64,000 nt of DNA, taken from positions 616,546-680,545 of the forward strand of contig NW_019217896.1 of assembly GCF_002571385.2 (NCBI RefSeq), read 5' to 3'. Below, piece by piece: positions 44,501 through 44,627 of the stretch. Position numbers and translations under genes: made by a program. This DNA is from Stylophora pistillata. Its lineage: Eukaryota. Every line of letters starts with the position of its first letter. The first letter of the stretch is position 1. The notes below the pieces were generated by a model. That model ran no database searches. It was not told where the DNA came from and saw only the letters and a list, made by a program, of their open reading frames with translations.

Positions 44501-44627
44501 CCTAACACTTTAACTCCCAACATCTGATCGTTAATTGTTTGCAAAAACAGCTGATTTGTATTTTGCTTTTATTTTGCAGCTTGACAATTCAGAATCAGAA
44601 GAGGAGGACAGCGACTTTGAACTATAA
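35513..44627 (+). CDS. SLC4gamma: SLC4 anion exchanger / bicarbonate transporter paralog (probable scleractinian SLC4gamma), ~1009 aa
   Basis: 13 GT-AG exons: 35513-35864, 36488-36600, 37429-37603, 37827-38113, 38363-38656, 39113-39290, 39764-40113, 40468-40662, 41023-41193, 41650-42175, 42802-42971, 43884-44054, 44580-44627; total 3030 nt, open. ATG preceded by in-frame TAA (35489) and a 5'UTR acceptor at 35458. Same intron phases as copy 1; exons 3, 6, 8, 10, 11, 12 have identical lengths (175, 178, 195, 526, 170, 171). The gamma label is inferred from derived features. Confidence 0.93.
39449..39600. mobile_element. Harbinger-type MITE
   Basis: CAGTAGCGGATCT...GGATCCGCCTCTG; related copy at 55082-55232. 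Confidence 0.65.
40385..40451. repeat. (GAT/AAT)n microsatellite in intron
   Basis: Directly visible just upstream of the exon 8 acceptor of copy 2. Confidence 0.9.

What the first reader, a model, noticed from the sequence alone, without database searches (positions are those of the whole stretch)
44580..44627. Downstream SLC4 lost the C-terminal YxxPhi/MPV sorting tail
Seen: copy 1 ends [23 protein letters not shown]; copy 2 ends [15 protein letters not shown]. Established: vertebrate AE1 ends DEYDEVAMPV, and truncating this tail mis-sorts kidney AE1 away from the basolateral membrane. Inference: tail loss may have re-targeted the duplicate to the apical, skeleton-facing membrane, a simple route to neofunctionalisation.
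Basis: partly seen in the sequence, partly recalled or inferred. Interest (0 to 1): 0.75.

Follow-up and report, generated by a model that had tools for sequence, protein, structure and literature searches.

The report
Coral SLC4γ lacks ancestral sorting tail

Summary
Observation confirmed. The window is Stylophora pistillata. It holds SLC4β (last exon 11838-11909, ...[14 protein letters not shown]) and, downstream on the same strand, SLC4γ (last exon 44580-44627, ...DSDFEL*).

- All 48 γ-clade protein records that reach the C-terminus are truncated. They cover 13 named species in 6 genera, both complex and robust corals. All 9 β clusters keep the tail, including Nematostella.
- RNA from 4 runs joins the penultimate exon only to 44580. 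The stop lies inside a terminal exon that runs about 1.3 kb further. No tail-like exon is encoded nearby.

In the tail alignment, γ's stop falls at the conserved Tyr codon, the equivalent of human AE1 Y904. γ is therefore a natural relative of the kAE1 R901X truncation, fixed on the γ stem branch. The retained stub is as conserved as the membrane domain.

The functional reading remains inference, and three points weaken it:
- The mouse knock-in orthologous to R901X stays basolateral in vivo.
- γ is reported on both calicoblast surfaces.
- The new ...FEL end still fits the loose class II PDZ consensus.

I found no paper noting the truncation. Moderate interest: it gives a testable hypothesis for a known gene.

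The parts
44580..44627 (+). Last coding exon of SLC4gamma, [15 protein letters not shown] plus stop (TAA at 44625-44627)
   Evidence: sequence; splice junction 44054|44580 in 31+47 raw reads and 2 contigs. P0391 maps here.
44628..45910 (+). SLC4gamma 3'UTR, contiguous with the stop codon. An ATTAAA-type signal lies near 45889 and transcripts end at about 45870-45910.
   Evidence: depth is continuous to the 45786-45946 bin, no joints lie inside, and contig pieces end at 45872 and 45910; sequence.
43884..44054 (+). Penultimate coding exon of SLC4gamma (VRTGKIH...EELEE). Its donor joins only to 44580.
35513..44627 (+). SLC4gamma coding region (start codon to stop; 12 exon HSPs mapped)
   Evidence: tblastn of P0391 (the HSP for residues 584-646 was not listed at my 88% cut-off). 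Pfam PF07565 and PF00955 on single exons.
11838..11909 (+). Last coding exon of SLC4beta, [23 protein letters not shown] plus stop. YDSV (YxxPhi) is at 11883-11894 and the terminal YMPV at 11895-11906.
   Evidence: The same tail is found in cloned AJQ31789.1.
1643..11909 (+). SLC4beta coding region from residue 71 of XP_022788270.1. The first 70 residues lie upstream of the window.
44654..44702 (+). Cluster of three sense-strand CGTGAC motifs 27-70 nt after the gamma stop. Clusters of the same motif follow the stop in two other corals' gamma mRNAs and are absent after the beta stop.
53170..54241 (+). Partial duplicate, about 73% identical, of gamma's terminal exon from about 44603 (inside ...EDSDFEL*) to 46152

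Best explanation
SLC4gamma is a natural C-terminal truncation of an AE-type Cl-/HCO3- exchanger. The truncation was fixed on the stem branch of the gamma clade, after the tandem duplication of SLC4beta and before complex and robust corals split.

Shown here:
- An ungapped codon alignment puts gamma's stop (TAA) on beta's Tyr codon (TAC), the Tyr of DEY-D-S-V.
- This removes the last 8 residues: the YxxPhi signal and the ancestral Phi-P-Phi C-terminus.
- The remaining stub, LDNSESExEDSD(FEL/YD), is conserved at least as well as the rest of the protein.
- Compared with beta, the stub has gained two extra serines in an acidic setting.

Inferred: in human kAE1 the homologous 904-YDEV binds AP-1 mu1A and the AMPV end binds a PDZ protein. 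Gamma therefore most likely escapes tyrosine/adaptor-based basolateral sorting, retention and endocytic control. It would then not be confined to the mesoglea-facing side and could also sit in the skeleton-facing membrane. I read this as relaxed polarity, not a clean apical switch. On this reading the tail change added a protein-level step to the known regulatory neofunctionalisation, which is calicoblast-specific expression.
For: Sequence:
- Tails and splice phase are as described.
- Tail alignment with vertebrate AE tails puts gamma's end one residue before the conserved Tyr. R901-DEYDEVAMPV-911 is quoted in PMC5206653.

Clade-wide loss:
- 44 of 71 records in the first gamma clusters reach the C-terminus, and all 44 are truncated; the other 27 are fragments without a C-terminus.
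- 4 of 4 Stylophora and Pocillopora records are truncated as well.
- 13 named species are covered.
- 9 of 9 beta clusters keep DSDxDEYD[ST][VL]xxP[VIY].
- 110 of 136 non-gamma SLC4 tails end Phi-P-Phi.

Tree:
- The gamma clade has support 100/100 and is sister to coral beta (100/99). Nematostella beta lies outside (100/100).
- DFEL* occurs in both the complex and the robust branch, so it is ancestral. DYD* is derived.
- The gamma stem branch is 0.43 changes per column against 0.11 for coral beta.

No rescue of the tail:
- The only acceptor used by the penultimate exon is 44580, and there are no joints inside the terminal exon.
- No other tail-like coding stretch was found on either strand of the window.

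Constraint on the stub: mean pairwise identity is 0.89 for the tail, 0.79 for the rest and 0.85 for the membrane domain, over 28 pairs.

Literature:
- The R901X truncation keeps transport and is mis-targeted in MDCK and HEK293 cells.
- AP-1 binding maps to 904-YDEV, and Y904 is a phospho-switch.
- Gamma is reported at both apical and basal calicoblast surfaces.
Against: - The mouse Ae1 L919X knock-in, orthologous to R901X, stays basolateral in vivo with no apical signal and only reduced abundance (PMC12128221). The cell-culture phenotype may therefore not carry over to tissues.
- Some cnidarian alpha-type SLC4 proteins have Phe in place of the Tyr (DEFD or DDFD). The Tyr is thus not indispensable in all relatives.
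- The new gamma end D-F-E-L fits the loose class II PDZ consensus X-Phi-X-Phi quoted, so 'PDZ ligand lost' is not secure. The Oculina-type end ...DYD does not fit.
- The localisation of gamma rests on light microscopy of very thin cells. Another paper calls such membrane assignments hypothetical.
- Nothing is known here about adaptor recognition in corals.
- Tail-less AE-type proteins also occur in echinoderms and a ctenophore, so tail loss is not unique to this case.
Confidence: 0.35

Rival explanations
1. Neutral or tolerated loss. The tail is dispensable in calicoblasts, and gamma's new role came only from regulatory change (calicoblast-specific expression) and changes elsewhere in the protein. 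The premature stop was fixed by drift on the fast-evolving stem branch, and later conservation only reflects constraint on the acidic stub.
For: - Published accounts attribute neofunctionalisation to expression.
- The gamma stem branch is long, 0.43 against 0.11, so many changes were fixed together.
- The in vivo L919X mouse keeps basolateral targeting.
- Tail-less AE-type paralogues exist in other phyla.
Against: - The tail is kept in 9 of 9 beta clusters and in 110 of 136 other SLC4 tails sampled across Metazoa, so it is normally under selection.
- In mammals its loss is pathogenic.
- No gamma lineage in 48 records regained length, and the stub is more conserved than the protein average.
Confidence: 0.35
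2. Regulatory remodelling without a polarity change. Losing the Tyr removes Src-type phospho-control of internalisation and the PDLIM5/cytoskeleton link. The conserved S-E-S-E-x-E-D-S-D stub adds serines that fit the CK2 consensus S-x-x-D/E (consensus recalled, not from a call). This would change turnover, endosomal cycling or carbonic-anhydrase docking.
For: - Y904 phosphorylation drives kAE1 internalisation, and Y904A is retained inside the cell.
- PDLIM5 depletion lowers surface kAE1.
- The L919X mouse shows reduced abundance, not mis-sorting.
- The three serines are invariant in the 9-sequence gamma alignment (S998, S1000, S1005 of P0391), whereas beta has one.
- Zoccola 2015 assigns LDNEE of beta to a CAII-binding type motif.
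Against: - There are no phosphorylation or interaction data for any coral SLC4.
- The CK2 reading is a consensus match on a short acidic peptide, where such matches are common.
Confidence: 0.25
3. Artefact: the short tail comes from a mis-called last exon, an assembly error, or a minor isoform, and the real protein carries the long tail from another exon.
For: None found. Read laying lists only joints seen in 3 or more reads and at 5% share or more, so a rare isoform cannot be fully excluded.
Against: - 78 raw junction reads from two studies and two contigs from two further studies all use 44580.
- The stop is followed by a continuous 1.3-kb UTR.
- The same end is seen in independent gene models and transcripts of 13 named species and in two metatranscriptome mRNAs.
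- No tail-like ORF was found elsewhere in the window.
Confidence: 0.03

Closest known systems
SpiSLC4gamma / scleractinian SLC4gamma (Zoccola et al. 2015, PMC4650655; Tinoco et al. 2023, PMC10268325)
   Same: It is this gene. It carries the same antibody peptide, lies downstream of SLC4beta on the same strand, and falls in the coral-only clade sister to beta.
   Different: The passages I saw in these and five further papers do not mention the C-terminal truncation. Zoccola gives the beta-gamma distance as 18,017 bp. In this window the beta stop and the gamma start codon are 23.6 kb apart, with N gaps and a reverse-transcriptase-like ORF in between.
Human kidney AE1 R901X (C-terminal delta-11) causing dominant distal renal tubular acidosis
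   Same: It is a homologous tail in an AE-type SLC4. The truncation removes DEY-D-E-V-AMPV and leaves transport intact, and the protein is mis-targeted in MDCK and HEK293 cells. Gamma's stop aligns with Y904, three residues after R901.
   Different: Gamma's truncation is a fixed, conserved wild-type state, not a disease allele. It removes 8 residues rather than 11. The mouse orthologue L919X is not mis-sorted in vivo.
SLC4beta and other cnidarian or bilaterian AE-type tails (...D-E-Y-x-x-Phi-x-Phi-P-Phi)
   Same: They share the last-exon structure and the acidic LDN/DSD stretch.
   Different: They keep the Tyr and the Phi-P-Phi end. Gamma does not.
Tail-less AE-type SLC4 of echinoderms (Apostichopus japonicus XP_071822453 group, Patiria miniata isoform X11) and a ctenophore (Bolinopsis microptera XP_063693014)
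   Same: They end within the acidic stretch after the xLD anchor, without Tyr or Phi-P-Phi.
   Different: These are independent lineages. Their expression and function were not examined here, and the Patiria case is one predicted isoform.

Membership tests
SLC4 bicarbonate transporter family | Band 3 cytoplasmic domain (PF07565) followed by the HCO3- transporter membrane domain (PF00955) | tested here: met
   Window exon 38384-38656 matches PF07565 (1.8e-34). Exons 39763-40113 and 41650-42174 match PF00955 (1.3e-36 and 4.8e-53). P0391 and P0327 carry both domains.
SLC4 bicarbonate transporter family | Anion (Cl-/HCO3-) exchange activity | not testable with these tools
   Only names given by sources ('band 3 / anion exchange protein 2-like') and clade position.
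Scleractinian SLC4gamma | Coral-only clade, sister to coral SLC4beta, with anemone beta outside | tested here: met
   The gamma clade has support 100/100 and includes window exon 41650-42174. Coral beta plus gamma is 100/99, and Nematostella beta is outside at 100/100.
Scleractinian SLC4gamma | Tandem position next to SLC4beta, forward-forward in robust corals | tested here: met
   beta at 1643-11909 and gamma at 35513-44627, both on the + strand. Literature passages.
Scleractinian SLC4gamma | Identity with the cloned SpiSLC4gamma (peptides used for the antibody) | tested here: met
   [15 protein letters not shown] is exact. [15 protein letters not shown] is matched by [15 protein letters not shown] (2 differences).
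Scleractinian SLC4gamma | Calicoblast-specific expression | not tested
   Literature only. The RNA runs show that the gene is transcribed, not where.
Tyrosine-based YxxPhi sorting signal in the C-terminal tail (as 904-YDEV of kAE1) | Tyr followed at +3 by a bulky hydrophobic residue in the cytoplasmic tail | tested here: not met
   The gamma tail [15 protein letters not shown] has no Tyr. The Oculina type ends Y-D with nothing at +3. Beta meets it twice, with YDSV and YMPV.
Class II PDZ ligand at the C-terminus (X-Phi-X-Phi, as AMPV of AE1) | Hydrophobic residues at positions 0 and -2 | tested here: inconclusive
   The consensus is as quoted in PMC5206653. Beta YMPV fits. Gamma D-F-E-L also fits this loose consensus. 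Gamma S-D-Y-D of Oculina and two unnamed corals does not. Binding was not tested.
kAE1 R901X-type truncation | Stop within the conserved acidic stretch, removing the DEY...MPV end while keeping the membrane domain | tested here: met
   alignment. In one search, PF00955 runs to residue 999 of 1009 in P0391.

The most novel reading that the evidence does not exclude
A single nonsense change at the Tyr codon of the YxxPhi signal, fixed in the first stony corals, released a duplicated basolateral anion exchanger from adaptor-based sorting. The exchanger could then reach the skeleton-facing membrane. This gave the calicoblast a vectorial bicarbonate exit and was one of the enabling steps of scleractinian calcification. 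The conserved serine-rich acidic stub and the conserved CGTGAC cluster just after the stop would be later refinements of its trafficking and mRNA control.
Probability: 0.15. Interest if true: 0.85.

Novelty: new variant of a known kind. Interest (0 to 1): 0.5.

Why it matters
SLC4gamma is the best-validated 'calcification gene' of stony corals: CRISPR knockouts stop skeleton formation (Tinoco 2023). Two questions remain open. What changed in the protein after duplication, and on which calicoblast membrane does it act?

A clade-wide, conserved loss of the one tail segment known to control sorting and membrane residency of the human homologue gives a concrete handle on both. It can be tested by mutagenesis: tail add-back or deletion, adaptor binding assays, and high-resolution localisation. 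It also offers a natural counterpart of a human disease truncation.

If the tail proves irrelevant, that too is useful. It would point to expression change alone as the route of neofunctionalisation.

Tried and rejected
1. PDB sequence search with the 23-residue beta tail. It gave only chance hits (RavZ, E about 2). The peptide is too short, so I compared tails by alignment instead.

2. Paper search was badly designed (min_terms 2) and returned unrelated PDZ papers. I replaced it with search 31.

3. The word search with the 290-aa C-terminal fragment P0311 returned mostly single-exon fragments. It added only one gamma tail (P0331). Its fragment hits did lead to the Stylophora/Pocillopora cluster.

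4. Relic of the ancestral tail in gamma's 3'UTR. By eye there is a weak resemblance after the stop. However, three gamma mRNAs share no tail-like coding there, only the CGTGAC cluster. Rejected.

5. Stop-codon readthrough. The in-frame continuation differs in all three orthologues and hits early stops. Rejected.

6. Alternative tail exon. A regex scan of all six frames found the tail pattern only at the beta exon. Four bare Phi-P-Phi-stop matches between 35 and 50 kb on the + strand lack any acidic or Tyr context.

7. The idea that gamma's end was acquired through the 53170 duplicate. Rejected, because the DSD codons are shared with beta, the tail is shared by all corals, and the duplicate is only about 73% diverged.

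Single exons were searched alone. Full-length comparisons used database proteins (P0391, P0327 and relatives).

9. Supplements of Tinoco 2023 and Zoccola 2015 (alignments, SI figures) were closed. They may show the C-termini without comment.

Full report
**What is at the coordinates**

Positions 44580-44627 follow an AG acceptor and read [15 protein letters not shown] plus TAA. A six-frame scan finds the only other LDN...MPV-type ending at 11838-11909: [23 protein letters not shown] plus TAA, also after an AG acceptor and on the same strand. In both genes the preceding exon ends ...ELEE and the intron is phase 0.

**Identity of the two genes**

I searched one exon alone (41650-42174) and used the database proteins it led to.

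This fits the protein matches below.
- *Copy 1 is SLC4beta.* S. pistillata XP_022788270.1 (P0327/P0162, 1192 aa) maps to copy 1 at 89-100% per HSP from residue 71 onward. The cloned 'solute carrier family 4 member beta' AJQ31789.1 (P0329, 883 aa) has the same tail. Zoccola 2015 places LDNEE at residues 861-865 of SpiSLC4beta.
- *Copy 2 is SLC4gamma.* S. pistillata XP_022788307.1 (P0391, 1009 aa) maps to copy 2 at 94-100% per HSP, including the last exon. PFX26995.1 is listed for P0391 and PFX26996.1 for a beta-cluster member, P0328; both are on a 707,910-bp contig. Copy 2 contains the anti-SpiSLC4gamma peptide [15 protein letters not shown] exactly and the second peptide with two differences.
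- Single window exons and both proteins match PF07565 and PF00955.
- In a completed maximum-likelihood tree (28 rows), the copy-2 exon falls in a gamma clade (100/100). This clade is sister to coral beta (100/99), with Nematostella beta outside (100/100). The gamma stem is 0.43 changes per column against 0.11 for coral beta.

**Refuter 1: do other gamma orthologues keep the tail? They do not.**

- A word search with the Porites orthologue (region 660-968) gave 7 gamma clusters. A search with a C-terminal fragment added one more. Fragment hits led to the Stylophora/Pocillopora cluster.
- Of 71 records in the first eight clusters, 44 reach the C-terminus and all 44 are truncated. The endings are [15 protein letters not shown] (24 records), LDNSESEGEDSDFEL (4), LDNSESEDEDSDYD (13) and LDNSESEAEDSDYD (3). 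The other 27 are fragments without a C-terminus.
- The four Stylophora/Pocillopora records end ...DSDFEL.
- The named species are:
  - Porites evermanni, P. lobata and P. harrisoni;
  - Montipora foliosa and M. capricornis;
  - Acropora cervicornis, A. muricata, A. millepora and A. digitifera;
  - Oculina patagonica;
  - Pocillopora damicornis and P. verrucosa;
  - Stylophora pistillata.
- DFEL* occurs on both the complex and the robust side of the tree, so it is ancestral. DYD* (Oculina and two unnamed corals) is derived and one residue shorter.
- All 9 beta clusters, including Nematostella, keep DSDxDEYD[ST][VL]xxP[VIY].
- Among 136 other SLC4 proteins with a tail after the xLD anchor, 110 end Phi-P-Phi. 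The 26 that do not are largely NBC-type tails of a different kind.

**Refuter 2: does an alternative last exon supply the tail? No evidence for one.**

- I laid four runs from four studies on 41600-46400.
- The penultimate exon's donor (44054) joins 44580 in 31 reads (19 starts, X21) and 47 reads (31 starts, X24), and in one contig each of X1 and X7.
- No other joint from that donor, and none inside the terminal exon, is listed. The reporting limits are 3 reads and 5% share.
- Depth runs on from the stop to about 45,900, where contig pieces end and an ATTAAA lies.
- No variant is listed within the coding tail. The nearest is at 44636.
- A regex scan of all six frames finds the tail pattern only at the beta exon.

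**How the truncation relates to the parent tail**

- Codon by codon and without gaps, gamma's TAA sits on beta's TAC, the Tyr of YDSV.
- The tail alignment with vertebrate AE sequences places gamma's end one residue before the conserved Tyr.
- PMC5206653 gives the human end as R901-DEYDEVAMPV-911. Gamma thus corresponds to a stop at Y904, three residues after R901X.
- A single TAC/TAT-to-TAA change is the simplest origin. This is inference.
- The stub is conserved. Mean pairwise identity is 0.89 in the tail, 0.79 before it and 0.85 in the membrane domain, over 8 gamma proteins and 28 pairs.
- For beta the tail is about as conserved as the rest: 0.83 against 0.82 among corals.
- Gamma's three serines are invariant in a 9-sequence alignment. 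They fit the CK2 consensus S-x-x-D/E, which I recall rather than take from a call.

**What the loss may do**

From passages read:
- R901X leaves transport normal but mis-targets kAE1 in MDCK and HEK293 cells. The AMPV end is a likely class II PDZ ligand that binds PDLIM5. Removing the last 4 residues causes intracellular retention.
- AP-1 mu1A binding maps to 904-YDEV. Y904 phosphorylation drives internalisation, and Y904A is retained inside the cell.

Evidence against a simple transfer to corals:
- Tinoco 2023 states that gamma is at both apical and basal calicoblast surfaces, citing Wang 2021 and Zoccola 2015. These are light-microscopy images of the same staining.
- Another paper calls such membrane assignments hypothetical.
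- Some alpha-type cnidarian SLC4 proteins carry Phe instead of Tyr.
- Gamma's new end F-E-L still fits X-Phi-X-Phi, while ...DYD does not.

My reading is that the secure, clade-wide loss is the Tyr signal. The most likely consequence is relaxed basolateral restriction or altered endocytic control, not a clean apical switch (about 0.35). Two rivals remain live: neutral loss with purely regulatory neofunctionalisation (about 0.35), and a change in turnover or regulation without a polarity change (about 0.25).

**Novelty**

- The genes, their tandem origin and gamma's role are published.
- I found no mention of the truncated tail. One search (terms 'SLC4gamma' and 'C-termin') reports 8 papers holding both terms, 7 of them listed. 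I read the matching passages of all 7, plus passages of Tinoco 2023 for 'C-termin', 'tail' and 'sorting', which gave 0 hits.
- Supplements were closed, and subscription-only papers are not covered.

**Side observations**

- A conserved sense-strand CGTGAC cluster lies right after the gamma stop.
- A partial duplicate of gamma's terminal exon lies at 53170-54241.
- Tail-less AE-type proteins occur in echinoderms and a ctenophore.

Noticed in passing
window 44654-44702; L001 about 6021-6120; L002 about 3271-3290: A cluster of sense-strand CGTGAC motifs starts 18-34 nt after the SLC4gamma stop codon in three orthologues. In the window, 3 of its 16 forward hits lie within 70 nt of the stop. In L001, all 6 forward hits of a 7.8-kb locus lie within 112 nt. 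In L002, both forward hits of a 6.2-kb locus lie within 48 nt. There are none within 300 nt after the beta stop. The window holds 27 matches on both strands against 13.9 expected. This may be a conserved gamma-specific 3'UTR element; its function is unknown.
   Followed up: partly
window 53170-54241 (+) versus 44603-46152: A collinear, about 73% identical partial copy of gamma's terminal exon. It starts inside the last coding codons (...EDSDFEL*) and runs through the 3'UTR. It lies 8.5 kb downstream, inside the HEPN/ApoL gene region described in earlier notes. It has no LDN start and no stop at the homologous place.
   Followed up: partly
proteins P0037 and P0382-P0386 (Apostichopus japonicus), P0026 (Patiria miniata isoform X11), P0072 (Bolinopsis microptera): These are independent AE-type SLC4 proteins that end within the acidic stretch (...LDSEDEDEVVISEEQ...LDSEEEEHEGFDASE...LDPEESGSELDESDHE), without the Tyr or Phi-P-Phi end. 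Whether they are expressed in skeleton-forming cells was not examined.
   Followed up: no
window 42888-43531 (intron of SLC4gamma): Very high RNA depth with many loose ends and strand-switching joints in all four runs. This indicates a transcribed repeat or transposable element inside the intron, not gamma exons.
   Followed up: no
window 11910-35512: The beta-gamma spacer is 23.6 kb here, against the 18,017 bp reported by Zoccola 2015. It holds N gaps (17925-18011) and long reverse-transcriptase-like ORFs at about 18.1-20.3 kb. A retroelement insertion or an assembly difference may explain the discrepancy.
   Followed up: no
cnidarian alpha-type SLC4 proteins P0012, P0167, P0168, P0171, P0188, P0194: These have Phe in place of the conserved tail Tyr (DEFD or DDFD) while keeping the Phi-P-Phi end. 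The terminal Phi-P-Phi is therefore more widely kept than the Tyr.
   Followed up: no
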